Assembly (NCBI GenBank): GCA_964247055.1
Contig: OZ176051.1
Coordinates: 5,518,001 to 5,582,000 of the forward strand
Reading direction: 5' to 3'
From: Paragordius varius
Lineage: Eukaryota > Animalia > Nematomorpha
DNA: 64,000 nt
Under the pieces are notes generated by a model. That model did not search any database, was not told the origin of the DNA, and saw nothing but the letters and a program-made list of their open reading frames with translations. Position 1 is the stretch's first letter. Each line of letters opens with the position of its first letter. This document shows positions 30,897-56,195 of the stretch, in pieces. The position numbers were made by a program, and so were the translations under genes.

Positions 30897-33800
30897 TTAT
30901 TCATGTCTCAGAGAGCACAGAGCCAAATCTTTGGATAATTTTAAGAGTCCTGCCTGTTCGATTCGCATTATACTGGATTGATCTGTATTCGGTTGTGTAC
31001 CACAAACTATTTCATCTATGAAAGAATCGGTGTAACGATACGTCGTAATATCCCCATTTTGTGTGGTTAGGGTCACGTAAGCGTTTTCCATATCTATACC
31101 GGCGTAAATCTAAAATATTTTGGTTAGGGTGAAGTATAAAAAGTTTTAATTATACTTTATAGTATATGCATTTTAATGGGTGTTTATTTCACACTATAGT
31201 AGGGCGATTTACAATACAATATTGTATGTATGCAACATTTTTTTGATTTTTCCATACACTATTGTTTGCGAATTGCCCTACTATAGTGTTAAATAAGCAA
31301 CCATTAAAATGCTTACTGTAAAGCATAATTGAGAGGTGCGAAAAAACTGAAACTAAGCACGGTTTTTTGAGTTTAAATAAGGCTAGGTATGGATTAATAT
31401 ATTTATTGAGTGTGCTATATTGTATATTTAGATTAAATTTATTAAAAATATATGGATATTTAAGCTACCTGAATTAGGTAACATTTTAATTATAAAACTA
31501 TTGAAAATTTAAAAGTGTGCTTAAGGCGCTTGACATTTTTTAAATATAAAGTGAGTAAACTATATTATTTTAAATATTAAACATATTATGGAGATTATTT
31601 TTATTAGCCTACCTTTGCAATTAGAAGTTATACTTCCTATCAAGCAATAGGTGGCTTTATGAAACGAAAGTTTTAAAAGTTTGTTTGAAATTTAAAAATA
31701 CCTTATATCAGTATTTTATAATCTTAAGTATAAAATGAAAATTACTTTCTCGTATGGTTGAGTTTCTAATCGAGAAACTATCCCAGTTTCGAAATCGATA
31801 ATTTTAATGGAACAACTAACGGAAAAAATGTCATTTGCTTTCACCTCAATCTAATATACAATTACGTTTTTTGTTAAATTGCACACAAAATATATTTTTA
31901 TGGATACATTTTATAATAAAATTAATTAACAAAAAGAATATCCTAAGCCTGGAACTATGCAACATTCAACACGCAAAAAATGAAAAAAATGGTAAAAATT
32001 ACAGTTTCTAAATCAGCAATAACGAATCCGGGCAATCGCCTAAATGTATTTTCCAAATTTTTGGCCTCAAAGGTTCGATAAATTAATTGATTTAAGGATC
32101 TTTTGATACGGACAATCGAGTCAAAACGAATGATTATTTCCCTTGATGCATCTTGCGGAATTGTGTACAATGGTAAAGAACTAAAATATATCGATTTAGA
32201 TTATAAAAAATTAGTTAAAGTCATAGTAGTTTAATGCCATAGGTTATTTACCAATGTTTAAATAAAATCTGTTGGGCTTAGTTTAACCGATTCACAAATA
32301 TTATGAATACGTATTTGTTCCGGTTCTAGTGCCATTTTTGCCAATGGTTCTAATATTCATCACATTTTTATTTTAAAAATATATGAAAACTATTGATTGC
32401 TACTTTTCTCTAAAAATACAAAATAATTATATTTTAATGGTTTTAAAAAGAAAATAATATCGACATTGTAATAATAAAGAGAAAAATGTATTTCGAAACC
32501 GCGTTCTACAGTTATAAACAATACACAAACTGTTTTTAAAAATTCATTTTGTCTTTAATGGTTCTAAAAAAGATATGGTCCTGGTTTTAGTTATTTAATA
32601 TTTTATCAAAATCTAGAATAATTTTATTTCCGGAGTCTGCTTATGTCACCTTAATTTATTTGTTAATTTTGTTAAAAGTGTTTAAATAATTTATTAAATT
32701 ATTTGCTCTGAGTATGAAGAAGATATATAAACAAATCATTTGACAAAGTAACTGATAAATAAGTTTCAGGTCAAAATTAATAATAGAATCGAATACATAA
32801 TATTCCAGTAAGTCAATTATTTTATAGTTGTTAGAAGATATCGAAACCGCAAAAAACAATTACACTTATGCCTATATTTGATTTTAAGCGTTTTTTTAAA
32901 ATTTAATTTGTTCTATTTTCACAACCTAAATTTATCGTCCCTTATTTTTATGGCAAATAATTTTTTAGCTTAAAACGAGTTAGTATCATATCACTTTGTT
33001 ACATACCTGTAAAATTGATGAGTTTCGCCGGAAGACATTAAGTTATATAAACCAGGTCCGATAACTGTTTCACATATTCGATCTTGACGTATATAAACAT
33101 CTAGCAATATATATAAAACATTTTATATTTATGTCCATTTTCCCAAAGTTTTAATATAAAATATACCATTTAGAGTTCAAATTCACCCTTAAACAATTCA
33201 AATTCACCCTCGAACAATTCAAATTCACCCTTGAACAATTCAAATTCACCCCCGAACAATTCAAATTCACCCTCAAATAAATAACATGTTTTTTAAGATC
33301 AAAAATTACCTATATTTTAATATATTTTTAAAAAATAAAATTTTGTTTTAAATTTAAATAATACTGAAAAAAATAATTAATTATGCCATAAAAGTATATT
33401 TTATATTAATAATGGGTTATATTAGTTCGAAAACACATAAATTATTTTTAGGGTGAATTTGAATTGTTCGAGGGTGAATTTGAATTGTTTAAGGGTGAAT
33501 TTGAATTGTTCGAGGGTGAATTTGAATTGTTTAAGGGTGAATTTGAATTGTTCAAGGGTGAATTTGAATTGTTTAAGGGTGAATTTGAACTGTAAATGGT
33601 ATATATTTTTTTTAATCCAGCTTATGATTAATTAACCCGGCAAAATGACTTGTGTCTAAAATTCCATCGAATTAAGGTTTTTTAGAAAACCGTTCTAATA
33701 TTACAATATAATATGAGGTAATTTTAAACAACATATTATAAAACTGTTTACCATCGACAATATTTAAACTTAACACCCTTTCTCAGTGAATGTAAATTTA

Positions 33801-35557
33801 ACCAAATTTGTTAAAAAACATGCTCTTATTCTAATTAATTACAATATTTATGGTAGCTATTATATTTTTTTCTGTAAATTTACGAATTTATAATATTATT
33901 CTAAGGCATGTATATAAATATGAAAAAAATAAAAAATATACTTTTGCCATCATACATACGATAATCGGTCAAACCCTGCTCGGCTAAACATATTAATTAA
34001 TGAATAATGTTAACAATTAATGATAAAATAATGTAAGGAGTATTTTTTCTCGTATAATTTATTTTCTGGTAACCTGTAACTCTCCCTGAGCAGGGAATTT
34101 CAATATTCATGGGTGGGTCCTGTTCTGCCGGTCTATCGCTCAATTTCATCATTAAGCCAATCATCATTAAACGTTTTGGATTGTGTAAAATGAAACCCGA
34201 ATCTACAGTAAAGTTTTGATAAAGCTCATAGACACGAACCCCTGTGGATGTTTGTTTAATTCTCATCTAAATATTATATCATATGTGATAAATAAAATAA
34301 AGATATTAATGACACAGTAGCGTATGGTGCAAACAATGTTTGTCCATAATAGGGAATTGTTTAATTTCAACCATTTTTTGTTTGTTACCATACGCTACTG
34401 TATTTATGAACATAGATAGATTTGAGTCAGGAAATAAGACTTATTAAAATCCATAGTGTAAAGGGGTTCAAATTATATATATTATCGAAACCGTTGGTGC
34501 GGGTTTCGGCAAAGTTAATTATTGTCTTTGGTTCGCACTATTAAATAAACTGTTAAAAGCGATTGTTACGGTTCCATTTTTAGTAAACTAATAAGTGCAT
34601 AGTTTTTCAATTATAAACGTTGGAAAAGAATTTTAAAAAATTATGATATTATTGCGTTAAATAAAAAAAGTTCTAAGAAAGTATTTTTGGAACGTTCGGG
34701 TTTAAAAACGATTTCGGAACTCTTATTTGTAAAAGGGCAATGACACAAGCGATGAAAAATATATCTTATTATTTATGCTAAAATCTTGTCCATTTTCGGT
34801 TAGTTGATTAGTTTTGATAATGAAAAATGGATATGGCATTGCTAAACATAATTGATTTTAATCTTTTTTAAAACTATTAATATAGCATCCTTACTTGAAG
34901 AGTAGTGCTTTTATACAGGGGTGCAGCCATTTGATATCTCGTTGTAAAATTATAGTAACAAGATCGTCTCATACGATAAGACGCATTCCCATAAGCCACA
35001 TGGTCCTGGCTATCATTGTAGTCTTGGATGAAGCATAACGCAACTCTCACATCATGGTATGGTACATCGATATAAAACTGTTGGAATAAAATGTATATAG
35101 TTAAAAATATTAGCCTATTTCTGTGTAAAAATATAAAAATTCTTGAAAGTAATAATGTTTTCCACTAATATTTATCACGGGGAGTAATTACCTCAGGTCT
35201 AAAAGAATTCAAATAACTCCATAATTGTAAATCATTCGTGCTCAACTCATAAGCATACCGAGTATATCGTATATCAATGTAGATATGATGTGGTATTTGC
35301 AGAATTAAATTCCCACCATCATTGTGGTGGCAATTCAATTTAGTTTCATTGTATCTGTAGAAAAAAACCATAAAATATCGCTTATATTACATGATAAATT
35401 TTGATTTGAATATCAGCTTAAATTGCTTATTGAATTCTAAATCTTAAATCTAAGAATATATAATACTTTGTCATTGAAAACACACGATTCAAATGGCACA
35501 CGCCGTTTGAGGGAAGGGCAAAGCAATACTCAACATTGTTTTGTCCAGAAACTGAGA
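30897..35557 (-). CDS. Uncharacterised, probably secreted Cys-conserved protein, paralog A (~370 aa, 5' end unresolved). Exons 35557-35467, 35354-35192, 35077-34895, 34266-34074, 33100-33007, 32180-32003, 31109-30897
   Basis: Seven phase-compatible GT-AG exons, each homologous to an exon of paralog B (45751-56195). No family recognised. Confidence 0.88.
33161..33604. mobile_element. Foldback element with inverted 21-bp minisatellite arms (5 units left, 7 right) inside an intron of paralog A
   Basis: Termini atataccattt(a/c)-agttcaaattcaccc are inverted. Unit is ttcaaattcaccc(tt/tc)(g/a)aacaa. Confidence 0.88.
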
Positions 35558-36149
35558 CTAATACATAAGATAACAGTTTAAAATATTTTATTTTATGTTT
35601 TTATTAATAGGTAAGGATACGGACCTAAAATGTATTAAGGACCAATGAAAGGTCTTTCGCCTTATCAGACTTGACAGTTATAATAGAAAAATAACGCATT
35701 ACACGCTTTGTATATTAGTCCGACCCTTATGATATATTCTAATTTTGTTATTATGAGTAATTAATCTTTAATTTGTTAAATGCTATAAAAATTGAAGAAA
35801 GTGGTTAAATTATTATAAATATATAGAATCACTCAAAATTTACATAAAGATCGCAAAGATACTCAAATTGGCATTTCTTTACGTATATCAAAACCTTATA
35901 AATTATATACTTTGTTATATAATTAAACATATATTTCTAGTTTTTAATCAATTACCCCCAGCTACCATTTTCAATAAAAAAAATTTTATTCGCTTGTGCT
36001 GCATGGGAAAAGGTGATTGGATTTTACTTGTTAAACTTAATAATATTCTTTACTGTAAATTATATCAGGGAATATTTTTCTAGAACTTTTAATATATTTT
36101 ACTCATGTTATATGTATATATACATATATATAATATATATATACATATA

Positions 36150-36340
36150 TAGTAAGAGTAAGTATACATTGCTAGAACTTTATTAATTATTGCCAAATAG
36201 CATATACAACAAAGGGCAGTATTGTTGGCTTATAGTTTTTTTCATTTTTTACTATTATTAGCCAATAATAATTCTCTCTGCTGCATATGCTATTTGGCAA
36301 TAATTAATAACTTTCTAGCAATATATACTTACTCATACTG
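36150..36340. mobile_element. MITE family 1 copy (opposite orientation)
   Basis: Same TIRs as 19506-19701; ends actcatactg|TA. Confidence 0.85.
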
Positions 36341-37063
36341 TATATGTATCCATATATAAAAATTTTAACCATAAAACATAAAATTTAGGCATACTTAGAA
36401 TCGAATAAAAAATAACGAGTGGTATAATTATCATTATGGTAAAATATTTGGTATTATAATTTTATTAAAATTATTTGGTATTTATAAGAATTTGCGTAAA
36501 CTTTATCTGAAAAAAGATATTGGCTTTGGTATCGCAGCTTAGCAAGGAATAACAACATATTTAATCAATTAGATTATCAGCATGTATTTGGCTATTGATT
36601 AAAAACTAATAATTCTGTCAATAATATGTAAATTTTTAAAAATAAGTTCGAAATATTGGTATATCATGTTTGATTTTGTTATCAAAATGTGTTGATTACA
36701 TTTAATATTATTAAAAACGATTAGTTACTTTGACTAATATCAGTATATATTTATATCTTATTTTTAGTGCACGTAAACAAACCAAGGGCAGGCAGGTTTT
36801 GAATAAATTTTTCAATGGTAAGCAGGCTAGTATAACCTTCACTAATTATAAAACCATAACTAATTTTAGCAGTACAGTACTGTGTATTGGGGAAAATGCC
36901 ACGTATGTAATCCGTTTGTACTGCTTTTTTTATAAACATATTTTTTTTATTACCGGTACAAAACCTCTCCTCTCAAGTGAGCATGGATTATATTTAAGCA
37001 TAAGATGCAAAATAAATTTTTAAAGGAAAAAAATTGGCTCAACTAAGATTTTATGCTAAAAAG

Positions 37064-37101
<38 letters not shown>

Positions 37102-37239
37102 TGTGACCAGATAGGCTGTTTTTAGCAGAACAGTGGGTTTTCAGAAAAAAACTGGGCCTGTACTGCGCCCACTTTTGTACTGCTTTTTGAAATTGAAAAA
37201 AATTTAATTTTTTATAAATATATATTAATTATTATTATA

Positions 37240-37760
37240 GCAAATACGTTGTCGATTTATTGCTTTTTCGAAGGTGTATTTTCTCCAGTTTATTCGATTG
37301 TAAGTGAGTGATGTTAGCTGTTGTAAAGAGATATTGGTTTATTTGGTTAGGTTTTCAATCCAGCGCATCTTGCAGCGTCCACGTTTCCTAAATCCTCCGA
37401 CCTTGCCTGTCATTAGTTGGAATTCCAAGTCATTAGCTCTGGTAATGTGACCAAAGTATGATAACATGCCAATCAGGTATATCTCGGGGTTTATTTTGTC
37501 TTTCCAAGTGATTCGAAGTATCTTCCGCCAGCACCAGATTTCGAAGGCGTTAATGTATTTTTCGTCTACCTTTTTTATTGTCCAGCTTTCTGATGCGTAT
37601 AGCATGCTAGGAATTATTAGGGATTTGACTAAACGGATTTTTGTTTTAAGTTTGATGTCGTGTGATGACCATAATTTATTATATTTTATCATTTTTTTAA
37701 CAATTCCTATTCTTCTTTTGATGTCGGGTTGATCTTGCGGTAAAAACCAAGATTGGCCTA
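37240..37760 (-). mobile_element. RTE-clade LINE 3' fragment (5'-truncated)
   Basis: ORF 37339-37692: LWSSHDIKLKTKIRLVKSLIIPSMLYASESWTIKK..INAFEIWCWRKILRITW..LSYFGHITR..GKVGGFRKRGR..RW, the typical RTE C-terminus. Confidence 0.88.
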
Positions 37761-38053
37761 TTTTATTGGTTAATATTTTATTTTTTCTTCTTATACATAA
37801 AACTTAAGATTGCAGCCTTTCACACAGTGGCAAAACTATAAATCTCGGAGTCCACACCGTAAGATTTAGGCTAATGGCTCTTTCACCCAGGGTATCCGCA
37901 AAAAGAGGTGCCTCAAAATTAAAATTCACAAAATAATTTATGATATTTTCATAATGTATGGTAGAGTTTAGAAAGTTCATTTTTTGTTATAATTATCAAA
38001 CGGAAAATATATAGATAATTGTATTCCCGTAACATTAATTTATTATGTATGGC

Positions 38054-41000
38054 TAAGGTGACCAGATTTTTTGAAGGAAAAAGCGGGACAAATCTGAGGG
38101 GGGGGGGTCATTGGGGGGCACAACCAAAAATTTTTATACAAAAAATTTATTGTAATATTTATTTATTTTTAACACAAATACATTATAAATATAAAAAAAT
38201 TTGTACCTCACAGGTTGTTTGTACCTTATTCAATAAATTTACATGTGCACGAACAAAGGGTGAAGTGATTGTAATATTCTAGAAAAAAATAATAAAGACG
38301 AAATCATCACAAAGTGCGCTGGGTCATGCAAGAAGCGGCACAAAAAATATTTTTAACAATTTAGCGAATAATCTTAATCAAAACATTATTGGCAGATACA
38401 CAACGCTATTCAAACAGCTACTGATTTGTTACCCCTGGATGTGGAAAATATAGATGTTAAAATGCTTGGATATTGCAGAACTGTTGGTTAACTCTTTTGC
38501 CAGCAATTGAAATATTTATAAAAATGTGATCTCCTAGAATCCTAATTTTTATCACAGGACAAAGGTCAAAATTCCAAGTCAAAAAAGGTTAAAAAATAAT
38601 TTTATACCATTACCTAATCGCAATATCATAAAACATCCAGAAAAACAAGGCTCAATCAATAGCCAGAATATAAAAATGTTTTATACAAACAGAGACGATT
38701 ATTTGGAAGACCAAACGGTGCACAATGACACTTTTTAATGAAGTCTCATTATTAAATAAATATATTGAATGAAAGCTTATATTATAAACAACAGAAAAAA
38801 ATACGTAGGATAGGTTAAAATAATCATTTTTAAAAAAATTATTTTCTATACAATAATATTTTAATTGTAGAATTTGCATTATCTTTACCTGAACCACTGC
38901 TATTGAACGCGTTTTTCCACAGTAAATTAAGTAAGGACACGGAATCAAATTTAAATGTTGAATTAAAGCCATTTTATGTGTTCAAATATAATTTGACAAA
39001 TTATGAAGACTTATACAATATTTTAAGTAATTTTGTTTATTTTTTAACATAAAAACTTTATAAATATAAGAAAATATTTTATTTTTTGGTATATTTTTTG
39101 TTTGAGTGAATGCGTTTTAGCAGATCGTCATCATTTTTAAAATATTGTAGAAGTCTTCACAAGAATTTGTCAAATTATATTTGACAGATAAAACGGCCTT
39201 TAAAATTTCAACATTTAAATTTGATTTTTCCGATGTCCACACCTGATTTATTGTGGAAAAAACGCGCTCAGTAGCAGCGTTGGTTCCAGGTAAAGATAGT
39301 GTGAATTCCACAATTTTTAAAATAATATTGTATGTAATATAGTTGGCTTCAAAATGATGAAATATTTCCAACCATTTCTTTTCTACTGTATATTTTTCTT
39401 TTGTCCATAATTTTAGTTTTTCATTATTAATATATCTTAACTAATGATACTACAGAAAAAAAATCATTTTCTGAAAGATTACTTTTTGAGAATTTATGGG
39501 AGCAGATATAATCAAATGATTTTTGAACATCGCACCAATTAAATTCTGATTTTAATGTTATCCAATGAAAATGATCAATTTCATTGAATTGCGTCGTCCA
39601 GTCTTCCAAATAATCTTTACAGTTTGTATAAAACATTTTTATATGGTACAGGATATCTTGGCGATTTATTAAGCCTTGATTTTCTAAATTATTTATTGTA
39701 TTGCGGATGGTTAATGGAATAAAATTATTTTCTAACCGTTCTTGACATTGGAATTTCAGGTTACTAACTTCATTGTCTACTTCGACTGCCGAAATTTTGT
39801 CACCTTCAATAAATTTAATAACATCTTGAAAGAGAGAAGCTTGATTATGTAAGAATTCTAACCATATTTTTGAAGAATCACTTTCAAAAAAATTTTTTAA
39901 AGTTGTAGGACATTTGTCCTGTGATAAAAAAAAGATTTTAAAGGATCATACATCTTTAAAATTCTTTCGATAGCTGGCATAAAAGCTAACCAACGAGTTT
40001 TACTATATCCAAGCATTTTTTGATATTGAACTTCTGCATTTTCACAGAATTCTTTCGGCGTTTCAACACGTACCGTGTATATATAAAAATAGGAATATAT
40101 TTTAACAACTACATTTTCCACATCTAGGGGTAACAAATCAGCAGCTGTTTGAAAAGCGTTGTGTTATATATGCCCTGCACACCCTACGCCAATAATGTTT
40201 TGATTAAGATTATCTGTTAATTTATGAAAAATATTTTTTGTTCCTCTCCTTGCTTTTCCAAAGTTCGTATTGGTGTTGTCAGCGCAATATGCGATAATTT
40301 TGTCTTTTAAATTATTTTTTTCTAGAATATGCATTATTGAAGTAAATATTATTTCAGAATTTTCAAGGAAGGGAAATTAAATCTAAAATTTTAATATTTA
40401 TACCGGTTTCTGAATCAAAATATCTTATCAAAGTAGGAAGTAATTTTGTTTCATGGTGATTTGAAGCATCAGAGTATAGGGAAAAGAAATTAATTTTTAG
40501 CAAATCTTTTTGTATTTCAGAAAAAGCATGTGGCGAAAAAACATTGCATACAATGGCTTCAGCCTTTGTACGGGCACATGTAAATTTTTTATTGAATAAC
40601 GTGCGAATAACCTGTGAGGTACAATCCATTGAACGAAATGAATGGCAATGATTTAAGGCGTGAAAGGAAAACAGGCCCTCAGCAAGTGCTAAATTCTTTT
40701 CTTCCTCTCCAAAAGCGGTTTTTCGAAAAAAATCGCTCATCTTGTGAGATGATGCCGTTATAATCAAACATTTTTGATGTTTCTGTGTATCAATATGCTT
40801 TGTAATGTCATGTTTGCCGCCATGTGCCAGGGTGAATTCCCCATCGCATATAAGACATTTAACAGACGATTCATTCTTCGTTTTTTTAATGAAAGGAAAA
40901 TCTTTCATTAATTCATCATTGAATTTACAGCCTCTTTTTGTGTTCATATTTATAAACTAAATATTAATATAATAAATGTTATATTACCTTAATTTCTGGA

Positions 41001-41479
41001 AAAAGCGTGTAAGGTATCGATTTGTAGTATCAATTTGTCTTTTAAGCTACCGATTTGTAGTATTAATTTAAATTTTTTATAATGTTGGCAATTATTAAAA
41101 CTAAATATTAGTATAATAAATGTTATATTACCTTAATTTTCTGGAAAAAGCGTGTAAGGTATCGATTTATGGTATCAATTTGTCTTTTGATCTAGTATAA
41201 CTTGGCTTTTTGATATTAATGACAGTAGTAGCAGGAAGGAAAGTGTATAATCATATGATATAAATTGGAAAAAAATAAATATTTTTAATTTAAATATAAA
41301 AAATTTTAATTTAAAATAAAAAAATTTTATTTGTATTAAAAAAAAATTATTTGTATTAAAAAAAATTTTTTTTTATATAATCATGAAAAAGCGGGACATC
41401 TTATAAACGTAGCGGGAGGCGGGACAAAGTGTGAAAAAGCGGGACTGTCCCGCCAAAAGCGGGACGTCTGGTCACCTTA
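38054..41479 (-). mobile_element. hAT DNA transposon, 3426 bp, with both ends intact
   Basis: 13-bp TIR taaggtgaccaga, perfect 8-bp TSD tgtatggc at 38046-53 and 41480-87, and subterminal gcgggac repeats. Contains transposase remnants. Confidence 0.95.
39117..40947 (-). pseudogene. hAT transposase disrupted by frameshifts and stops
   Basis: Fragments: zinc-finger-like CLICDGEF..H..H, RSMDC..CARTK, DASNH, YSKTRWL, and the dimerisation-domain motif LPGTNAATERVFS, spread over four short ORFs. Confidence 0.9.
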
Positions 41480-41699
41480 TGTATGGCATATGATTTCGAA
41501 ACCTTTTTTCGCAAAAAAATAAGAGTTTTTTACGTGTTCTGCACTCATTTGGTAGGATGTATGATATTTCTTAATTTTTTTCCTCACTTTAATTTTTATT
41601 AGTTTTTTTTTTGCGTAAATAAAGTTGATTTATTTTTGAAGCATGATGGAAACGGCATAACGCTTTAAGATATAATAAAACCCTTTTTTAAATATTTCG

Positions 41700-42330
41700 A
41701 TGATGTTGAACATTACTATAAGTTGAATTTAAATTAAAAGGTTTGTTTGCTTGGAAAATTTGGAGAATTTTTGTAATAAAACACTTTTTATTTAAAATAA
41801 ATTTGAAAACGAACAAATTTTTAAACAAAATTCTGAGTTAGAAAATATTTAGCATCATCGAACTATATATATAAATGGTATAGCATCTCAACCGTTTATA
41901 TCATTTCCATCATGAAAATAGTATGAAGTACGGTTCAACAAAATTTTAAAAATTAAATTTTAAAAAAATGGATTTTTATAAAAATATATTTAGTCGATAT
42001 CAATGTTTAGCATAAAAATTATTGCACAATGTCGAAATTTTAGAGTTTTAAAAAACAGTCCATTTTAAAAGAGCCAAAAAATTGGGGATTTAAAAATTTT
42101 TAAAATATTGTTTTGCTTTTTATATTGAGTTTATGTTATATTTTAGTGATATCTTTTGAAATATCACCAAAAAATATATTAAACACCTTCAATTGTATAC
42201 GGAGCACTTACCACAAAAGTGTAAAAAACTTTCTTCAAACTCGTGAAGGTTAAAACCAAAAGCACCATGATAGCCCTGATATTTTCCTATCAAAGCAAAT
42301 ATATTTCATCAGGATCTTTTTTAACTGTGT
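41700..42330. mobile_element. Partial copy of the foldback family at 22440-23600
   Basis: Shared tttagcatcatc, ccacaaaagtgtaa, aaaccaaaagcaccatg and attttcctatc blocks. A further copy lies at ~45050-45340. Confidence 0.55.
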
Positions 42331-42411
42331 AATATACCACACCGATGGCGTAAAAACAGGCAAAGTATGTTTTAACTTTGTACTGCGTCAAAGTTTAAAA
42401 TATCTGGTCAC

Positions 42412-42456
<45 letters not shown>

Positions 42457-42759
42457 TATATAAATAATATGGGTTTTATTCGGTTTTAATGCATAGTAGG
42501 CAAGGCCATACCCAAAATGGTTCTATATTTTAAATCACTTTTAGCGTTGTTTTACCAAAAATTTTATTGCAGTAAATATCTAAAAAAAATTGCACAACAA
42601 ATTGCTTTAATTTAAAGGGTAACAGAGTTTCTCCATGCTTTCTTAAAGCTAAATTTTTGAGAGCACATTTAAAATATTTTTTAAATTTTTTCGATCATCC
42701 TGCACTTAGATGATATTTGAATAAGAGTAATCGTTATAAATTTCATTTTTATAAATATT

Positions 42760-44053: not shown

Positions 44054-45697
44054 TTTTAAAAAGTCTTTAAATATTAATTTATATTATATTAATTTGATCA
44101 AATTTCATAATAATTAAATATTAATCAAAATTTTTAAGTCTATGATTTTTCAAAAAATCATGATGCGGATAATCGGCCATATTTTCCCACCATCAGCTTC
44201 ATCAACAGTTGGATACAACACATTCATTTCAGTCCTCCGATTCAAATTGGGTGTGAGGACCCCAGGCCTGTTTAAAATCAAATATCTTTAAAAATATAGA
44301 ACAAACTAAAACGATTGCAAAAGTTTGCAGTTATGTAACATTGATGCACCGAAATATAAAAAGGATTCATTTAAAAAACTTGATATTACTTATTTTATTA
44401 AACCATAAATGTGAAAATTTAGACAGCATGACATGTGTGTATTGACTAAATATAGCAATAATACAAAATAAATCCATTTTTCTGTTTATATCAATGTTAG
44501 TATGCTTTAATGAAAAAAAAGCTTTCATTTTAGCGTTAGACAAATAAACACGATATTTTGCAAAAATATTGCAAATAAAAATGGCATCTAAAAGTTTTAT
44601 ATACAACTTTTTTTCAAAACGAAATTTTATATAGATATTTTAACTTATTTATATATTTTTTATTAGGATCGAAGAATAAATTTAAATCGGAACCGTTTTT
44701 TTCATCAGTTTGTTAAATATATCAATTTAAATATATGGGGACTTTAAATACCCCAATTTAAATCGAGTTTAAGTGGGTGGTTAAATTATCAAAAATATCA
44801 CATAAGAGCGATTTGGCGATTTTTGATTTTGGCAAATATGGATAGATTGTACTATGAACTCAAATAACAAGACCCGTCGAATCTGAGATCTATAGTCTAA
44901 ATATACTTTAAAGCTCATCCACATATTTAACTAATATTTCTTTCTATGAGTTTATTGGTTAAATAAATTTAAATTTTCCAAATCCAATTGATGATTGCAT
45001 AATACCATTATGTCCCTAAGAATGATGCGAATTATAGCTCATTTTATAAAAGCAAAAAAAATGGGACTTTTGGAACCCACATCTAAAAATTAAAATTTTT
45101 AGAAAATAAATTTTTTTGCTTTTTTGTATAGTTTATAATATATTTTAGTGATATTTTTTGGAATGAAGACGATAGCTTTCATCAAAATCCTTTAAAAATA
45201 AGTGCTCAATTTTGCCATTTTCTTAATGGAGCGCTTACCACAAAAGTGTAAGTAACTTTCTCAAATCCTTCTTAGGGCCAAAACCAAAAGCATGATAATC
45301 CTGATAGATTTTTTTTATCAGAAATATATTTCATTAGCTTGTTTTATTTGTGGACACTGTGTAATATTTCTAAATAACTTGCAAGGCACCAAAAGAAATT
45401 CTCGATACATCTATCAAACAAAATAGATTACAAGATATATTTTGTAAGCAGCGATTTTGTGCATTGTATTAGACATACGTGTCAATGCCAAATTACGGAA
45501 CTATAAATGTAAAATAAACCATTTCATTTCAAAAAATGGACAAAATTGAAAAAGACAATGCAAGGAATTAACCCCTTTGTATGCGGTCTTTGAATAAAAC
45601 GCTCAAAGCGATCATAATTGTGATTAATAATAAAAAACACAAACAATTTGGATATTCATTCAGGATTGATAAATTATGAACATAAAACAATTATTTA

Positions 45698-45728
<31 letters not shown>

Positions 45729-45750
45729 AATACATTTAAATAACGATTAA

Positions 45751-48700
45751 TTATGGGCATATAGCTAGTTCCTTGTAGAGTTTCAGTATCCCCACTTCTT
45801 CAAGCCTAAGAATATGGGTCTGTTGCATGTTAGGTTTTGTTTCGCATCTAATTTCCTCAATGAAGGAAGCAACAAATTGCAGTGTTGAGACATGGTCATT
45901 GGATGTGATGAAATCAACATAAACAAATCCCAAACCCATTCTCACTTTGACCTAATTGATATATTATCAAATATATTTTTTCATTTTTACCGTTATTTAT
46001 AGAGCGGAGTGAAAGGCAGCCATGTTCAGAATTTTAACGACCAAAGTCAATAGCTGCAGAGATTGTATAAATTTACCTAGATTTATATTATTTTTTAAAG
46101 TAAGTCAAAAAAAATTAAATAAAAAATTATTTTTAGACCCGATTTATTGGGATTGAGTAGTAAAATGCCACAAACCGTAAACTAATAAGGTTGACCGATT
46201 AATTGCATAGGTTACATGGCTGTAACCGCTGTCATAAAAAACAAATCAACATTAAACAGAATAAATATTGAAATTATACGGACAAGACGTAAAAAAATAA
46301 AGACAAATATTTTTTAGAAAAGACATACTTCTAAATCTTTATTTTTTATATAACACACTGTTTTGATCTGCTAAGTATAAAATATAAAATTGGTAAGTAA
46401 ATCAATCAAGTATGTATTTTATTGCATTTAAATGATTTTTAGAAGATATAAGGTTAAAAAAAGTATTTGTCTATTAAAAAAAACTTTGTATTTATATTTT
46501 TACGTTTTCCGCATAATTTTAATATTTACTGTATGTATTGTACCCTATATTAAAAAAATATTGATAAATGTAAAAATATGAGTGTGGGATCATAAAGTTT
46601 AAAATTCTTAGTTATTAATATATTATTTCATCAATTATAATCAGAATAGGTTTTCGTTTATTTAATAACAATTCATATTGATTGTCTGATTATGGTAAAT
46701 GACTGTAATCAAATTATCAAATCAATCAAAAGTAGCCCTTTTAACTACTATAAATATAATTTTTTTTTATTAATTTAATCTAGAACCTTTTGTTGTTGTA
46801 TTGAAAATAATTGCGTGATGTTTCCAGTTCTATGACTCGTTATTTGTATCGAACAATTTATATTAAATAATTGGTTAGCTTCTAATACAATCTAAATTCA
46901 AATAAAAAAGTACATGCATGCCTTAAATGGTACTATAACCCATTTTTTATACAAGATAATTACAGTATGAGTAAGCATACATTGCTGGTTTTTCCCAGAT
47001 AGATAAAGCAAAGAAAAATACATTTGGCGGATAGTTTTTTTTCGGTCATCTTCTATTAGCCAATAATGTCTATGCTGCATATGCTATATGGCTAAAATTA
47101 AATAAAAAATCAGCAAGGTATACCTTATAGGTGTAGATTTATCCCATTGGGAAGGGATTTTGACTTTTTATGCCTGAAAATGCGATGGAAAAAATGTTTT
47201 TAGAAACCTGAAAACTTTTTGCGATAAAAATCGTACCTTTTTTAAATATGAGAAGAACACACCATAGTCATCAAATACATTTTTTTATACTTTAGGAATA
47301 TACATATTCTCCATTTGTAAAGAATGCAATCTAAAGAGGCAAATTACCCTGATGAAGTTCAACGGCAACTCGGAATTAATCCTATTATAATAAAAGTTGA
47401 GTATCCCGCATACAACTAGTATCTCTTATCAACAACTCAATTAGAAACAACCTCTGATTTAAAAACCAAACAATAAGTCCTTTCCAAAGCGCAGGTTCAG
47501 TACGGTATTTTTTCATTTCCTTTTTATCAAATCAAATTTAATAACACTAACTTACAGTAAAAAAATTGTATATATAAATTTACAATCATAAAAATTTCAA
47601 TAGAAAAAGTTTTAAAGGTTTTTTTCCAATACTTATATGGCTCACGCTACTCTGACAATTGGTTCATCAATTGTACAAAGGGGTGCATCCCCTGCTATTG
47701 TCACTGTCAAAAATCAGCAATGTATATTTACTTTTACTTTAGTAAGTATTTTAACTTACGGGTTGGATTACAAGATCCTGGAAGTATCGTAATTCCCGCA
47801 GATTTTCTGCTATATTTGTAAGCACAAAGGTGCGAAACACTAATTGATTCAATGCTCGTTGAATTCGAAGTTGAGATTCATACCGTATGGCTATTACATT
47901 TTTATCTGGCCAATACACATTGTACAATGGTAATGATCTATGAATAATGTGCACCAATTATACCGAAACGCTAAAAATGGATTTTAAGTGTTTTTTTATA
48001 CCCAATCGACCCAAAAATATGTTATAATAAATAAGATATTTTGAATAAGTCACTTTAATCCAGTCAAAAATTCAATAACATTGTTTAAGAAAAACAACCG
48101 TGATTATCTCCCCGCCATCGGACCCTCTTCCGGATTTTAATTTAAAACAAATTTATATATAATATTGGCTTATATGTAGTAATTTTAAGTTGACTATTTA
48201 TTTTATTTGGATACAATAGTTTATCTATTGGTAATGATATATATGTTATCTAGTCCAGTTTCTTTGCATATATTATTGTTTTTTCAAAAATTAAAAATTG
48301 ACATGAAAAAGGTCAAATATTTTAATACCATATATACTTGTAAAATTTGTTAGTTTGATTTGCAGACACCATATTGTAAATACCATCCTCGTCAACAATG
48401 TCACACAAATTTTCTTGGCGAATAAAGGTATCTAAATAAAAGGTTAATATATTGTAAAAAAATAATTTTATATCATATTACATGACATACCCTTTCCGTC
48501 TAAACTTCTGTAATCGGGTAAGTTTTGTGCACCTAAACATAATATATATAATACAATTGATCAAATATAAGGTCATTTTACTTAGACATTGTTTCTATTG
48601 TTCTAAACAAAATTAATTTGTTTAACTTTTTTTAAAGAAATAATAGATTTTAGTTGCTTATAATTTATGCAAGAGTTAATCACTAAAAATTCTTATAACT

Positions 48701-51700
48701 TACCATTTATATTATCAAATTTAACCGGTATTAGAAAATATTAATTTTTAAATCGATTTTTGATTGCAATTTGATTTATTAAAGAGAAACGAAAAAAACT
48801 TAGCCATATATAATAAATGGATAGAGTTGGTGTTGAATCTGCCCGGTTAGGAATGTCGTGACAACGACCGCGTATTATAATAAATATGTGTTTAGCATAT
48901 GATATGAAATTAGGATAAAATTATTTTTAGTAAATAAAAAATATATTTTATAAAATCAATATTATTGCAACAAATATAATAACCCTTTCATTACATTTTC
49001 ATTTTTTTACGCGATGACATTTGGGGTAGTTTTTTCCCCAAAGCTTAAAGCAATAAAGAATTCTTTTTGAAAGTTGTTTTGGTCAAAATTTTCTTATCAA
49101 ATTGTCTTATTTTGGATTAAATAAAAAAACTTAACTTACAGTTCTAACTTCCAGAATTTAATTTTTAAATAGCTCTAAACGATCGAAACAAACAGCTGAT
49201 ATTAAAATCGATAATTACCAAGTATTTGTAACTTCGAAGCTTTTAAAAATTAATTATTAACATTTTCTAACCATAATATACTTTTATTTGCCTGTTCCAT
49301 TGACTGTGAAAAATTTAAAGAAAATATGCGGAAAAATTAAGATGAGGATTTTTTAATTTTAAAATTAAAGAAATCCTCAACAACTTATCGCCGCCATTTT
49401 TTATCGATAAAATAGGCAAATAAACTTTTTTTATAGTTTAAATAAAGATAATTAACATTGGGCTAACTTTACCAGCAAACTTTTGATATTTATTGATTTA
49501 AATATAATTTGTTCTTTCAATAGTTTTGAATCCATTTAAATTTAGGATAGAAGCTAAAAACTGTAAAATTTTATTTTGTAATACAGGAGAGTGATTGGTT
49601 ATTAAATTTTAACCAAAACAACTTTAAAAACAGTATACTACTTTAAGCTATGGGTAAAACTATGTTAGATAAAAAACGTATTTTTACAGTTTTTTAATTT
49701 TCACAATCACTGCTGCTATTGAAATCTATAATATTTAAAATTTGTTGGTAGGAAGTTATTCAAATCAAAGTTTTTCATTTCATTGTAAACCATAATTTAC
49801 ATTTATTTGCTTGTTTAATTTAAAAACCAAAAATAAAAAAGGAGGCGAAAAAATTTAAGATAAAGTTCTTAATTATTTTTTTTTAAAAAAGAACAATTGT
49901 ATCATAGCCTAAAGACTAAAGAGAGTATATTAAATTGGCTTAATACTTACGTTTTCTGAATTGACTCGGGGGTATAAAACTTCCCTAAAATGTCATGAAG
50001 TGTTATTTATTTGTTTTTTTACTGGTAAACACCTAACTTTATGTGAATAATAATTTATAATTTTAATGTTATTTAAGCATAAATTTTGTAAGATAATTGA
50101 TTTAGTAAAATAATTACAAAAGCCTATTATAAAATCCAAATAATAATTCGAAATATTTAATTTTTTTAAGTTATATATACAACTAAACAATGAGAAACAT
50201 AAATATTTTGCACTATGTTTTTGATTAATAATTGTTTTATATATAACTTATTATTGGATCGTGACATGGTATTTCAATGTTCATGGGTGGATCTTGTTCG
50301 GCTGGGCGATCACTTAGTTTTAGCATCATACCAATTAACATGATGCGTTTTGGATTAAACATGACATGGCCAGCATCGACTGTAAAATTTTCATGGAGCT
50401 CGTAAACCCGGGCGCCTCTATGCGTTTGTTTAATTCTTACCTAATAAATGATTGAAACTTACATAGGGTTTTTTAGTTATTTTAATATGTAAAAGGTGAT
50501 ATACATTTTGAACCAATATATTTTTCGTCAAAGTTGTATTAGAAAAAGGTTAATTACACTAGAAACTTTTTCGAGCACCACCACTAAAATTTTAGATTTG
50601 GAATGATTTCAGTGTTCTAAAATCGAATCTGAAATGCTCCCCAAGATATAACACGTTTTTTCAAAAATCAGAAAATCAGATATAACTTTATAATAAAAAG
50701 TTATTATATTATAAAATTTTAGTACGGGTATAAACATTAAAATTTAAGGATCCTTAAAAGCTATTTTTAAACATTTATATATGAATAATTAAAAAAATAC
50801 TAAAAGAGGCATTTGTTTTGGTTAACTTGTTTTTCTATTCGGTTAATTCTTTTAAAAGGCAATGTTAATTATACCTAGTGGATATTATCTATTTTCAAAT
50901 ATTATCGGATGCGGTATATTTTGAATTTCAGATGTAGGAGCTTAAGGAAACGGTAAATTTTAACCAGACGTCAAAAAGAATATGAAGATGATTTAAATAT
51001 AATAAAGGATTTATTTGTCTCATGAAAAAATAACAGTTTTGGAGACTAAATATTTTAATATTCATAGTAGCGTTCTCAAGTGATTATAAGACTTTTAATT
51101 TAACACGACAATTTTTTCATCTGTAGAGTGTTACCATACCAAAACATATCACAGTAATACATCTAACAGAAGATAGTCTAAAACTCTTATTTTTTATGTT
51201 GCAAGAAAAGCAGTTTTCTATATTACAACATTTATTTAAATATATATCGTTATAACATTTAAAATATGAATTTTATTTATTATATACAATAGCATTATAA
51301 TTCTATGTTTCAAAAATATAATGAAATTCCTGTCTGTGAAATCCCAATTTTATCGAATTATTCGTTCATTATTTGAACATATGTCCACTAATAATGATTT
51401 TTTTAATTAAATACAAAATAAACAATTAAATTTTGAAAAAGTTCTATTGATGCCTTTTTTGTTTTGACCTTTCCATGGTATCAGTTAACAGAAAATACAA
51501 AAAAATGGGGTGGAGCAAAACCTTGTTGACTGATGTTATTAAACATTAAACATAGTTATTATTAAGTAAAGCCTTGATGCATTTATAAATTCTAAAAATT
51601 TGGACGACTATGATTTTAAAATCAATAGCCGTTAATCTGTGATCAATAGTATTTCAAAAAATATTTTTAAATTTTAATCATATATTATTATATATTCATT

Positions 51701-54700
51701 TGTCAGTTTTTTAGTTATTAACAAAACAAATTTGGCGAAAAAGTTGGAGATGAATATTATATTACATTTTATAATTTTTTAAAATATTTTTTTTTGAATA
51801 ATACATCTTAAAGGCCATAGAATGTATATTTATGGTAATTCAATAATTAAAACCTAATAATCTACAAGATCATGATATTAAAGTGTTAAAAGAGTTAGGA
51901 AATTTCTATTTTTCCAATTTATGATCGATGCATTTTTTAGCGTTAAATATTCTTATGCGAATACTAACTATTTATGTCGAAATAAGTCATCTTTAGAATT
52001 AGTTACCATTGTTAAATCTAATAAAAATGAAATATCCCTGTCTTTATTACAATATAGTTATCAATCATAAACTTTATTGATTATTTGTGCGGCAAAAATG
52101 GGGATAATAAAAGTTTGATGAATTATATATCATTCGAAAGCCAAATGTGTCAGGATAATGAATATTACAATGATATATGCGGTTAAAATACTAGAAAAAA
52201 GTTATTTAAATTTTTATGTTACTAGACAAAATCAAAAAATCGTATTTTTACCCCACATTGGATTAAATAAAATTAATAACAATAGATGAAAACGTGTCAA
52301 TTAAATTTTATTTGTGTTAATGTATAATTCTAAACGCAAAATATTATCAACAAAGATTTTAAATTTTTCCGTAGGGGGGGGGGGGGTGTCAGAAATATTA
52401 TCAAGAATGTTGACTAAATGGCATTTGTCGTCAAATTTGAACATGAATTATTTGTATGTGGTTAGAGATTTTAATTTTATAAAAAATAATAAATTAACTC
52501 TATATGTAGAGATTACCCTATATATCGCCTCCAAAAAATTTTTAGCTTTATATAAAAAGAAATCTTTTCGATGATTTGCACCAAAGCGGAAGCTGAGTAT
52601 ATTTTTACAAAACATCCAATACATATATAATAAATATCTTTTACATACATTTCGATGCAAAAAAATTAATCTATCATTTTTCGATTTAGGAAATTTTTTA
52701 CCCGAAAATTTGATTATATATTTTTGGAAAAATTTTGGCTTTTAATACCGGCTTCAGGACATGAAAATTTAAATAAAAAATCTGAGATCTTAGACCCTTT
52801 TTTCTTCACCAAATGTATGGAAAAGATATTTATTATATATGCATTGAATGTTTTGTAAAAATATACCTTTGGTGAAAATTATTGAAACAATTTCTTTTTT
52901 ATATAAGCCTTTAAAATTTTTTGATGGCGATACATTGGATAATCTATATATCAGGGCTTGGAACCGCATGGAACCGGAACCCGGTTCCTGGGATTTTAAC
53001 AAGAATCAGTTCCATTGGGATGGAACTAACGCGGTTCCGGTTCCACTTCTCCGGGAATCACCCCGGTACCGATTCCAAAATTTCAGAAATCACCCCGGTT
53101 CTATCTATAAATTTTTAGGAATCAACCCGGTTCCGGTTCCAAACGTTCAGGAACCAACCCAGTTCCGGTTAAACCCCCTTGATTTCTGGTTCCCATATGA
53201 TTTTTATCATAAAAATTTTATTTTATTATTTAAATTTGATTGCACTACCTATTACTACTTCAAACTTTAAACCTAAAATTAAGCGCTTATATTATATTAG
53301 CGATACTTTGTGAATTTTAGGCGATTCTGTTCTAAAAAACTAATAGTCATAAGTCAAGTTTATTTATAATACATATGTTCGTATAGATAGGTCTTTGTTG
53401 AAAGGAGTTTTTTCACCCGTAATTTTATATTTTCAGATTGTGAAGCTGTTTGACCAGCGAATTGCTTGGTGCAATTTTCTAAAGTTATATAAAGATTTTT
53501 TAGATGCCATACTTAATTTACTCTCATTTTATATTTTTCTTATACATTTTCCTATTAAATTTTTATAATTTGTTTCATTTATTATGCTAGACTATATTTC
53601 TTTCACTATACATTTGGCAATTTATAATAAATTGTTTGATTTAGAGTTGTTAATATTTTGGTTTATTATAATAATAATTTTGTAAATCATTTAATCAAAA
53701 GTCAGGAACCAAAAATGGAACCGGTTCTACATGTAAAGAACCGGTTCCGGAACCGCTAAACTTTTAAAAAACCAACGCGGTTCCGATTCCATTTGTTCAG
53801 GAACCACCCCGGTTCCGGTTCCAAAATATCAAGAACCGCGCGGTTCTACTTTTAAATTCTTAAGAACCAAGGCGGTTCTGGTTCCACTTGTTCAGGAACC
53901 GACCCGGTTCCGGTTCCTTTTTTGTACCGGTTCCAAGCCCTGCTATATATATTAATATATGATTGCTTTAATTAAAAATAATCTTTCAGTGCATATTAAT
54001 TAGTTTCTTGTTCAAATTTGACGACAAGATGCCATCATTTAGCTAATATTCTTGATAATCTTTCTGGGACCTCCTGAAAAATTTAAAATCTTTGTTGATA
54101 ACATGTTGCGTTTAGAATTATCCTTATTTAATTTTGGCTAATACTAGAATATTTAAATAACTTTATCTCTACCATTTTAACCGCATATATCATTTAAATA
54201 TTTAGTATGCTGAAGCTTATAGCCATCGAATAAAATACCATTTGCACTTCAAGAGTGTCTTTGAACACTTCGAGTCTATCCTTGAACATTTCAAGTTGGT
54301 CCCTAAAAAATTCAAGTGGGTGTTTGAACATTTCAAGTTGGTACTTGAACATTTTAAATTGGTTCCAAAATTGATTAGTTTAAATTAAACCATTTTCGCA
54401 ATTATTTTATCATTTTATTATTTTTTACTTAATTTATTATATATTTATTCACTTTATAATAAAATTTTTTATTCAAAAACCACTTTTTTGTTTCAAACTA
54501 ATTTTTTCCAATTTAACAAAATTATTAACTTTTAAATGTTTTTAATAAAAAATTAAATTATTATTAACCCAGAAAACTTATATTGTTTAATTTATTTAAA
54601 TCTTAAAATCTATATACTGAATAAAGATATACGGTTTCTAAATGATTAAAAATTGATAATTCAAAGTTTATGTTAAATAAAGAAAATAGGTCAAAAATAA

Positions 54701-56195
54701 TAAAAAAGATAAATGATGCACGATTTGATTGATAAATTATGAACAAAACAAAAAAGTCAAAAGACCAACTTGAGGTGGTTGAAAAGTGTTCAAGGATTGA
54801 ATTGCTAATGGTATCTAAATAAGTCATTTTGCTACGCATCGTTTTATGCAAAGAAAGTATTAAAAATATTTCAAGAAATGCAATTTTTACCAATTAAAAA
54901 ATATATAATTAATTTTATGTATGATAAACATATGTTTTAGAGGATTAATTATTTTTGAAGCGGTTTCAGTCACCAATAATCACTTATGCCAGATTTCCAT
55001 CTGCATATAAAAGACTTTAATGGCAAACATACTATATTTAGGCGAGTTTTTTAAATTATAAATTAACCTTCAAATCCCTTGTATTGTTCAAGGTTATAGA
55101 CAATTTGTAGCTTGATGTGAAATTGTAAAAGCAATTTTGTTCAACTAAAAAGGACCGATTCCCATAAGCGACATCTTGACTTATATTGTTTTCTTGATAG
55201 CATATAATTACTCTTAAATCATACCAGGGTACATCAACGTAAAACTAATAAAAAAACTGGATTTTAATTTTGTCAAATATGTTGAAATATTCAATAAATA
55301 AATCTTAAAGAAATCACCTCTGGTTTAAAATTCGTGTTTAAATAACTCCAAAAACTTCGATCATTTTCTCCCAAATAATAGACATATCGTATATTCCGAA
55401 AATTAAGGTAAATTTGCTGTGGTAAAATGAATACCAAATTTCCAAAATTGTTGTGGATGCATGGCAACATGGTAGAAAAATATCTGAAAAAACAATTTTA
55501 TGGTAAATTTGAAAAATATGAAGCACACATATTCTCAATCTTTCATTATTATAGAGCTTCTTTTTTTAAATATCATTTAAGGGTTAAAAATTATTATTTC
55601 GAATCGAAAAGTTTTTAACAATCGGTTTATAATAATTCTTTTTTAAAAAAAATGCATAGCGCAAAAATTTACAACAAAGCCATTTTAATGAGGGGCGTGT
55701 TTAAGAAAATGAAACCCCAAAACCGAAAATTACCATTTATAGTAAAAACTGAAATTATACGGACAGAGCAAAAATATAAAGACAAATATTTTTTTCTAAA
55801 AGACAATACTTTTATAAACCTTAATTTTTCTCATATAAATTATATAATAACTGTAAAATATATAATTGATTGTGAATTAGCAATTTAAAATAATTAGTTA
55901 TGTTTTTAAAAATGAAGTTTATAAAATTATGGTTGTCTTTTAGTAAAAAACATCTGTCTTTATATTTTTAGGTCTTGTCCGTATAATTTTAAATTTTACT
56001 GTATTTTGCTTCGAGTTCTTTTTTGTAAATTTATTTTTAATTATTTTCAATCAATCAATTATTAACCTTTGATTAAGACGAAATGCTCTGTTCAGGTAGC
56101 ATCGTTGGCTAGGAGGTAATGAAATACAATCATTATCATCACTTTGCGCTTGTCTAACTACAGTAATAATAGGAATTAGATAGACTAAGTGTATA
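45751..56195 (-). CDS. Uncharacterised, probably secreted Cys-conserved protein, paralog B (~378 aa, 5' end unresolved). Exons 56195-56067, 55483-55318, 55244-55068, 50440-50248, 48431-48338, 47937-47760, 45951-45751
   Basis: Seven phase-compatible exons. Exons 4, 5 and 6 have the same lengths as in paralog A (193, 94, 178 nt). Begins with hydrophobic IHLVYLIPIITVVRQAQS. Confidence 0.88.
46257..46531. mobile_element. MITE family 2 copy
   Basis: aatattgaaattatacggacaagacg ... cg-tttccgcataattttaatatttactg|TA. Confidence 0.7.
52160..54150. mobile_element. ~1-kb foldback palindrome interrupted by a younger MITE
   Basis: Arm 52170-52660 is the reverse complement of 52800-52950 joined to 53943-54150. 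Confidence 0.75.
52952..53942. mobile_element. hAT-type MITE (991 bp) with gaaccgg subterminal arrays
   Basis: 15-bp TIR cagggcttggaaccg and perfect 8-bp TSD ctatatat at 52944-51 and 53943-50. Confidence 0.93.
54235..54370. repeat. Degenerate 21-bp tandem repeat (ttgaacatttcaagttggt..), about 6 units
   Basis: 21-bp periodicity, starting after taccattt like the 33161 foldback terminus. Confidence 0.6.
55740..56001. mobile_element. MITE family 2 copy (262 bp, TA-flanked) in intron 1 of paralog B
   Basis: TA|tagtaaaaactgaaattatacggaca ... tgtccgtataattttaaattttactg|TA. Confidence 0.8.

What the first reader, a model, noticed from the sequence alone, without database searches (positions are those of the whole stretch)
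30897..56195. Tandem pair of an unrecognised secreted glycoprotein family with 9 invariant Cys and an invariant 19-aa motif
Paralogs A (30897-35557) and B (45751-56195) share all six intron positions and phases, and three exons have identical lengths. All 9 Cys align. N-glycosylation sequons align (GN[A/R]S, YNFT, NFTVD). The central exon is 44/64 identical and contains an invariant KLSDRPAEQDPPMNIEIPC, while the other exons are much more diverged. This implies an old duplication with purifying selection on a core functional site. B begins with a signal-like hydrophobic stretch, and there is no downstream TM segment. I cannot place it in any known family. Long alternating beta-strand patterns with terminal helices could fit a lipid- or ligand-binding fold such as TULIP/BPI, but that is an untested guess. 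This is the best candidate for a novel lineage-specific system, for example a cuticle, egg or host-interaction secreted protein family.
Basis: partly seen in the sequence, partly recalled or inferred. Interest (0 to 1): 0.8.

Follow-up and report, generated by a model that had tools for sequence, protein, structure and literature searches.

The report
Tandem orphan secreted-protein gene pair
Two neighbouring genes of an AT-rich animal genome (probably a horsehair worm) are old duplicates, kept intact by selection, that encode a probably secreted cysteine-bearing protein with no relative found; the search for distant relatives was limited, so this is an ordinary orphan family for now.

Summary
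Two minus-strand genes, A (30897-35557) and B (45751-56157), each have eight colinear GT-AG exons, seven shared intron positions and five exons of equal length. The proteins (384 and 379 aa without the missing start exon) are 47% identical. All 9 Cys and 4 N-x-S/T sites align, the central exon is 44/64 identical, and it holds an invariant 19-aa motif.

Selection is clear. The motif differs at 13 of 57 bases, all silent. Silent sites are saturated (pS 0.79) against pN 0.33. Introns do not align.

Corrections: seven shared introns, not six. B's "signal-like" start is probably a translated polypyrimidine tract upstream of the true acceptor at 56157. The real start exons are unproven; I give one candidate signal-peptide exon per gene.

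No family was found by Pfam or PDB exon by exon, by a central-exon profile against 1.84 billion proteins, or in metagenome and viral DNA. These are exon-sized queries with low power. No RNA evidence was obtained.

Best reading: a lineage-restricted, secreted, disulfide-bonded protein family, function unknown. Interest is modest.

The parts
30897..31109 (-). Gene A exon 8 (213 nt, includes the stop codon); 2 aligned Cys
32003..32180 (-). Gene A exon 7 (178 nt)
33007..33100 (-). Gene A exon 6 (94 nt); 1 Cys
33942..33983 (-). Gene A exon 5 (42-nt small exon)
34074..34266 (-). Gene A exon 4, the central conserved exon (193 nt, 44/64 aa identical to B). It holds the invariant 19-aa motif at 34090-34146.
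   Evidence: relatives' contigs show 1 difference in 307 nt and 2 in 214 nt here
34895..35077 (-). Gene A exon 3 (183 nt); 2 Cys and 3 shared sequons
35192..35354 (-). Gene A exon 2 (163 nt); 1 Cys
35467..35557 (-). Gene A exon 1 as modelled (91 nt, phase-1 acceptor, no start codon); 2 Cys
36395..36434 (-). Candidate start exon of gene A (ATG, 13 hydrophobic residues, donor in the right phase). Unverified.
   Evidence: inference only
45751..45951 (-). Gene B exon 8 (201 nt, includes the stop codon); 2 Cys
47760..47937 (-). Gene B exon 7 (178 nt)
48338..48431 (-). Gene B exon 6 (94 nt)
48491..48532 (-). Gene B exon 5 (42 nt)
50248..50440 (-). Gene B exon 4, the central conserved exon (193 nt). 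It holds the invariant motif at 50264-50320.
55068..55244 (-). Gene B exon 3 (177 nt)
55318..55483 (-). Gene B exon 2 (166 nt)
56067..56157 (-).
57392..57461 (-). Candidate start exon of gene B (ATG, 23 residues with a long hydrophobic core, gtaagg donor in the right phase). Unverified.
   Evidence: inference only

Best explanation
A and B are two intact protein-coding genes on the minus strand. They arose by an old tandem duplication, and both have since been kept by purifying selection. Each has at least eight coding exons plus an unidentified start exon, and encodes a soluble protein of about 44 kDa (384 and 379 aa as modelled).

Most likely (inferred, not shown) the protein enters the secretory pathway through a signal peptide on the missing first exon. 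It would fold with about four disulfides from its nine invariant Cys and carry N-glycans at up to four conserved sites. It would act outside the cell as a binding protein. The invariant loop-like segment S-D-R-P-A-E-Q-D-P-P-M-N next to an invariant Cys would be the functional surface, and the faster-evolving outer exons would tune specificity between the two copies.

The family appears restricted to the lineage of this genome, which earlier scan notes take for a horsehair worm. It is not recognisably related to any described family at exon-level sensitivity.
For: Shown:
- Colinear exon blocks between the two copies, with a summed tblastx E-value of 2e-84.
- Both spliced frames are open, all 14 modelled introns are GT-AG, and there are seven shared intron positions.
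- 47% identity, 9 of 9 Cys aligned, 4 shared sequons, and 44/64 identity in exon 4.
- pS 0.785 against pN 0.326; where dS is measurable, dN/dS per exon is 0.18-0.47.
- The 19-aa motif has 13 differences in 57 nt, all synonymous, so this is selection and not gene conversion.
- Between the copies only exons 2-4 and shared repeats align at the DNA level.
- CDS GC is 0.36-0.38 against 0.26 for the window.
- In relatives' DNA the exon 4/5 region differs at 0.3-0.9% of positions, against about 5-10% in flanking intron pieces.
- Of the 8 exon variants listed, 4 are silent and 4 are conservative replacements.
- There is no membrane-span-like segment and no internal repeat.
- Hydrophobic start-exon candidates in the right phase exist for both genes.
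- No hit in Pfam, PDB, 1.84 billion representative proteins, the word search, or metagenome and viral contigs.
Against: - No transcript evidence. The three possible RNA runs of the same species label hold none of gene A's words, and nothing from the two of them that were laid (X6, X8) lay on it.
- The start codon and signal peptide are not established, and no micro-intron solution exists just upstream.
- Sequon counts are not clearly above chance.
- Nine is an odd number of Cys.
- All homology searches used single exons of 29-70 aa, so a diverged member of a known family would be missed.
- Exon-wise AlphaFold models were uninformative (pLDDT 48).
- The binding-protein mechanism is inference from sequence features alone.
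Confidence: 0.55

Rival explanations
1. The proteins are highly diverged members of an already described extracellular domain family, for example a lectin-like or other beta-sandwich module or a zona-pellucida-like module. They went unrecognised only because queries had to be single exons.
For: All searches had low power: queries of 29-70 aa, and an E-value threshold set against 1.84 billion proteins. The alternating hydrophobic patterns and the strand-rich parts of the low-confidence exon models are what one would expect of a common beta-rich extracellular fold.
Against: No Pfam model gave even a weak consistent signal across exons or across the two paralogs. There is no C-terminal membrane anchor, which most ZP proteins have. 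The invariant motif matched nothing anywhere.
Confidence: 0.3
2. The proteins are not secreted effectors. They are resident enzymes or cofactors of the secretory pathway, for example a Golgi or ER type II membrane protein with the anchor on the missing first exon, and the invariant motif is a catalytic or substrate loop.
For: The size (about 400 aa), the conserved Cys and sequons, a hydrophobic N-terminal exon candidate, and one extremely constrained short motif also fit a luminal enzyme.
Against: No glycosyltransferase, sulfotransferase or other enzyme family signal in Pfam. Housekeeping luminal enzymes are normally conserved across animals and would have been hit by the central-exon profile.
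Confidence: 0.1
3. The genes are silent relics or mis-modelled open frames without present function.
For: No RNA evidence. No start codon was found in the modelled exons.
Against: Two copies remain fully open after silent sites have saturated. The motif has 13 silent and 0 replacement changes. Splice sites are conserved at seven positions.
Confidence: 0.05

Closest known systems
Taxonomically restricted (orphan) secreted Cys-bearing protein families of parasitic worms, including other clustered orphan secreted families noted by this scan in the same genome
   Same: Tandem paralogs, a multi-exon structure, conserved Cys, a probable signal peptide, no relatives in public protein sets, and evidence of purifying selection.
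   Different: These proteins are larger (about 380-400 aa) than the peptide-like families noted elsewhere in this genome. They have no repeats or mucin-like stretches, and they have one unusually constrained 19-aa core. Whether they relate to any of those other families was not tested.
BPI/LBP/CETP (TULIP) lipid-binding proteins
   Same: Soluble, probably secreted, about 400-450 aa, apparently strand-rich with helices near the C-terminus. The structural part rests on low-confidence exon models.
   Different: No Pfam LBP_BPI_CETP signal in any exon. No internal duplication of two barrel halves. From general knowledge, BPI-type proteins have very few Cys, whereas these have nine conserved Cys. 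The fold was not testable.
Zona pellucida (ZP) module proteins such as nematode cuticlins
   Same: Extracellular glycoproteins with about 8-10 conserved Cys spread over about 260 aa, common in worm cuticle and egg coats (general knowledge).
   Different: No Pfam Zona_pellucida signal in any exon. No C-terminal hydrophobic anchor or propeptide region. The proteins end in a Cys-bearing segment that is helical in a low-confidence model.

Membership tests
Any Pfam-A family | Match to a family profile at or near its gathering score | tested here: not met
   Twelve exon translations from A and B gave only E 0.07-0.16 noise hits, to different unrelated families. Power is low because each query was one exon.
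BPI/LBP/CETP (TULIP) | Sequence match to the LBP_BPI_CETP N- and C-terminal domains | tested here: not met
   No hit in any exon.
BPI/LBP/CETP (TULIP) | Two similar alpha/beta-wrap barrels (internal duplication, elongated fold) | not testable with these tools
The exon models had pLDDT 48.
Zona pellucida module | C-terminal propeptide with a membrane anchor or hydrophobic patch after the module | tested here: not met
   The highest 19-residue hydropathy mean is 0.8-1.2, and none lies at the C-terminus.
Zona pellucida module | Profile match and the ZP-N/ZP-C Cys pattern | tested here: inconclusive
   No Pfam hit per exon. The Cys spacing was not compared with a ZP alignment.
RHS/YD-repeat proteins (protein atlas lead) | Repeated YD beta-hairpin motifs conserved among members | tested here: not met
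   Atlas score was only 0.86-0.88 with 78-101 of 256 shared features. The Y-x-Y-like stretch of A's exon 8 is not conserved in B. There is no internal repeat.
Secreted N-glycoprotein (generic class) | N-terminal signal peptide | tested here: inconclusive
   The modelled exons lack an ATG. Candidate hydrophobic start exons lie at 36434-36395 (A) and 57461-57392 (B) in the right phase. There is no RNA to confirm them.
Secreted N-glycoprotein (generic class) | Conserved Cys and conserved sequons beyond background | tested here: met
   9 of 9 Cys are conserved at 47% overall identity, and 4 of A's 5 sequons are shared with B. The raw sequon count is not above shuffles.

The most novel reading that the evidence does not exclude
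The pair founds a protein family, possibly with a new fold, that is confined to horsehair worms. It would be secreted at a life stage not yet sampled by RNA, for example the larva, cyst or in-host juvenile. Its invariant acidic, proline-rich loop would bind a host or cuticle/egg ligand.
Probability: 0.25. Interest if true: 0.5.

Novelty: new member of a known kind. Interest (0 to 1): 0.3.

Why it matters
Horsehair worms are among the least studied animal phyla, and their host-interaction molecules are essentially unknown. A conserved, probably secreted, lineage-restricted family with one extremely constrained site is a reasonable candidate for expression and localisation studies. Orphan secreted families are common in such genomes, though: this scan has noted several in this one. 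Nothing here points to a new mechanism. The practical value is a corrected gene model for two genes that appear absent from the public protein sets searched.

Tried and rejected
- **Pfam, exon by exon**: nothing.
- **Word-based protein search with exon 4**: nothing. The length window excludes full-length relatives.
- **Exhaustive profile search with exon 4, A and B aligned**: 0 hits at E<=1e-3.
- **PDB profile searches with exons 2, 3, 4, 7 and 8**: only chance hits, E>=0.29.
- **Protein atlas with exons 4 and 8**: nothing for exon 4. A weak RHS/YD lead for exon 8 was rejected because the motif is not conserved in B.
- **Back-translated motif scans of metagenome and viral contigs**: none confirmed.
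- **AlphaFold on exon 4 and exon 8 alone**: pLDDT 48, unusable, so no fold search was run.
- **Possible RNA runs of the same species label**: nothing laid on gene A, so neither splicing nor expression could be checked.
- **Micro-intron (18-35 nt) solutions linking a nearby ATG to exon 1**: none, although earlier notes report such introns at 5' ends in this genome.
- **Further paralogs in the window**: none.
- **Earlier scan notes by sequence, by words and near this place**: nothing on this family.
- **From memory only**: a galectin-like 'F/H-N-P-K/R' resemblance in exon 4. Dropped because Pfam gave no galectin signal.

Full report
**What is there**

The window is 26% GC. A translated comparison of the two regions gives seven colinear conserved blocks with a summed E-value of 2e-84. 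A more sensitive comparison of the upstream flanks adds one more block carrying two further Cys.

I placed splice sites so that both copies use the same positions.
- Gene A exons: 35557-35467, 35354-35192, 35077-34895, 34266-34074, 33983-33942, 33100-33007, 32180-32003, 31109-30897.
- Gene B exons: 56157-56067, 55483-55318, 55244-55068, 50440-50248, 48532-48491, 48431-48338, 47937-47760, 45951-45751.

All 14 introns are GT-AG with polypyrimidine acceptors. Both joined frames are open to a single terminal stop. Exon lengths are 91/91, 163/166, 183/177, 193/193, 42/42, 94/94, 178/178 and 213/201 nt. That makes seven shared intron positions and five equal-length exon pairs. Introns in A are 90-893 nt. 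In B they are 59-4627 nt and swollen by repeats.

The proteins as modelled are 384 aa (A) and 379 aa (B), and 47% identical. All nine Cys align, and four N-x-S/T sites align. The central exon is 44/64 identical and contains the invariant motif. No segment reaches membrane-span hydropathy, and there are no internal repeats.

One claim needs correcting. B's "signal-like hydrophobic stretch" lies upstream of a better acceptor at 56157. That acceptor gives the same phase and the same 91-nt exon as in A, so the stretch is most simply the translation of the polypyrimidine tract. A shows the same effect upstream of 35557.

Neither modelled gene contains a start codon, so at least one further 5' exon exists. 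Earlier scan notes say genes of this genome often begin with 21-26-nt introns. I tested that here and found no such solution. Hydrophobic ATG exons with donors in the right phase exist at 36434-36395 (A) and 57461-57392 (B). They would give plausible signal peptides but are unverified.

**Is it more than chance, and is it under selection?**

- At the DNA level only exons 2-4 and shared repeats still align between the copies. The duplication is therefore old.
- The proportion of synonymous differences is 0.785, which is saturated. The nonsynonymous proportion is 0.326. Where dS can be estimated, dN/dS per exon is 0.18-0.47.
- The invariant 19-aa motif differs at 13 of 57 bases, and every difference is synonymous. 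This rules out recent gene conversion and shows strong constraint on the amino-acid sequence.
- CDS GC is 0.36-0.38 against 0.26 for the window.
- Contigs of DNA runs from a differently labelled organism (X3) and from another sample of the same label (X4) differ by 1/307 and 2/214 over exons 4-5. Flanking intron pieces differ by about 5-10%.
- Of the eight exon variants listed, four are silent and four are conservative replacements. Only 40 of 277 variant rows were shown, so no formal test was made.

**What is it?**

Nothing placed it in a family.
- Pfam on twelve exon translations gave only noise.
- The word-based search with exon 4 gave nothing.
- A profile of exon 4 against 1.84 billion representative proteins gave no hit at E<=1e-3.
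- PDB profile searches with five exons gave only chance hits.
- The protein atlas gave nothing for exon 4, and for exon 8 a weak RHS/YD lead that the B copy does not support.
- Motif-based scans of metagenome and viral contigs confirmed nothing.

These tests exclude close relatives, and they exclude any protein elsewhere that keeps the motif. Queries of 29-70 aa cannot detect remote homology. AlphaFold on single exons gave pLDDT 48 and is unusable. Its strand-then-helix pattern for exon 8 is only a hint.

That is the decisive missing step.

**Expression**

The DNA runs hold the locus. The possible RNA runs of the same species label hold none of its words, and nothing from them lay on gene A. 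This does not show silence, because the assemblies are small and the stages unknown. It does leave splicing unconfirmed.

**Most likely explanation**

Shown: two intact, anciently duplicated, selectively maintained genes.

Inferred: the products enter the secretory pathway, are disulfide-bonded and probably N-glycosylated, and act as soluble extracellular binding proteins. The invariant acidic, proline-rich loop beside an invariant Cys would be the functional site, and the faster-evolving outer exons would differentiate the two copies. This rests on complete Cys conservation, conserved sequons, the hydrophobic start-exon candidates and the absence of a membrane span.

Rivals are a diverged member of a known extracellular fold (0.3), a luminal enzyme (0.1), and silent relics (0.05).

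**Context**

Earlier notes of this scan take the genome for a horsehair worm and list several other clustered orphan secreted families in it. A published horsehair worm assembly, Gordionus montsenyensis, has 26.93% GC, close to this window. That is not an identification.

**Verdict**

This is a real and well-behaved orphan gene pair with corrected models. It is of modest interest until the full-length protein is folded and expression is shown.

Noticed in passing
window 33150-33615 (intron 5 of gene A); related units at 54245-54370 (intron 3 of gene B): A MITE-like element. Its two 138-nt inverted arms are 91% complementary, and each is built from a 21-nt tandem unit. In two DNA runs the word depth here is 10^4 to 10^6, against roughly 3-220 nearby, so this is a very high-copy repeat of the genome.
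   Followed up: partly
window 31094-31684 and 36019-36412: Two further stretches with word depth raised up to about a thousandfold in the DNA runs. The second shares similarity with B's intron at 46944-47101. Both are probably dispersed repeats.
   Followed up: no
window 28145-28840 (+): Two adjacent open frames on the plus strand downstream of gene A. The second matches Pfam GST_N_4 (E 5e-23) and Tom37, as in metaxin or failed-axon-connections-like genes. This is an ordinary conserved neighbour.
   Followed up: partly
window 37339-37692 (-) and 40363-40947 (-): Two open frames between A and B. From memory they look like a LINE reverse-transcriptase tail and a zinc-finger/hAT-transposase-like N-terminus. 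Pfam gave no hit at E 0.01. The spacer between the paralogs seems filled with transposon debris.
   Followed up: partly
window 53028-53170 and 53770-53917 (intron 3 of gene B): Two arrays of a 32-nt tandem repeat (66-70% matches). They overlap or lie near a 140-aa plus-strand open frame at 52848-53270 that has no Pfam hit.
   Followed up: no
both coding sequences (exon coordinates under parts): Neither coding sequence contains CAGCTG, and the whole window has six. Another note of this scan reports that motif saturating exons elsewhere in this genome, so it is not universal to its genes.
   Followed up: partly
sequencing runs X3 (organism B) and X4/X5 (organism A, sample S3): A run labelled as a different organism holds the same share (0.31) of the locus's words as a second sample of the window's own species label. 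This could mean closely related species or mislabelled samples. A 2026 preprint reports species misidentification among Chordodes hairworm data sets. No link to this genome was tested.
   Followed up: no
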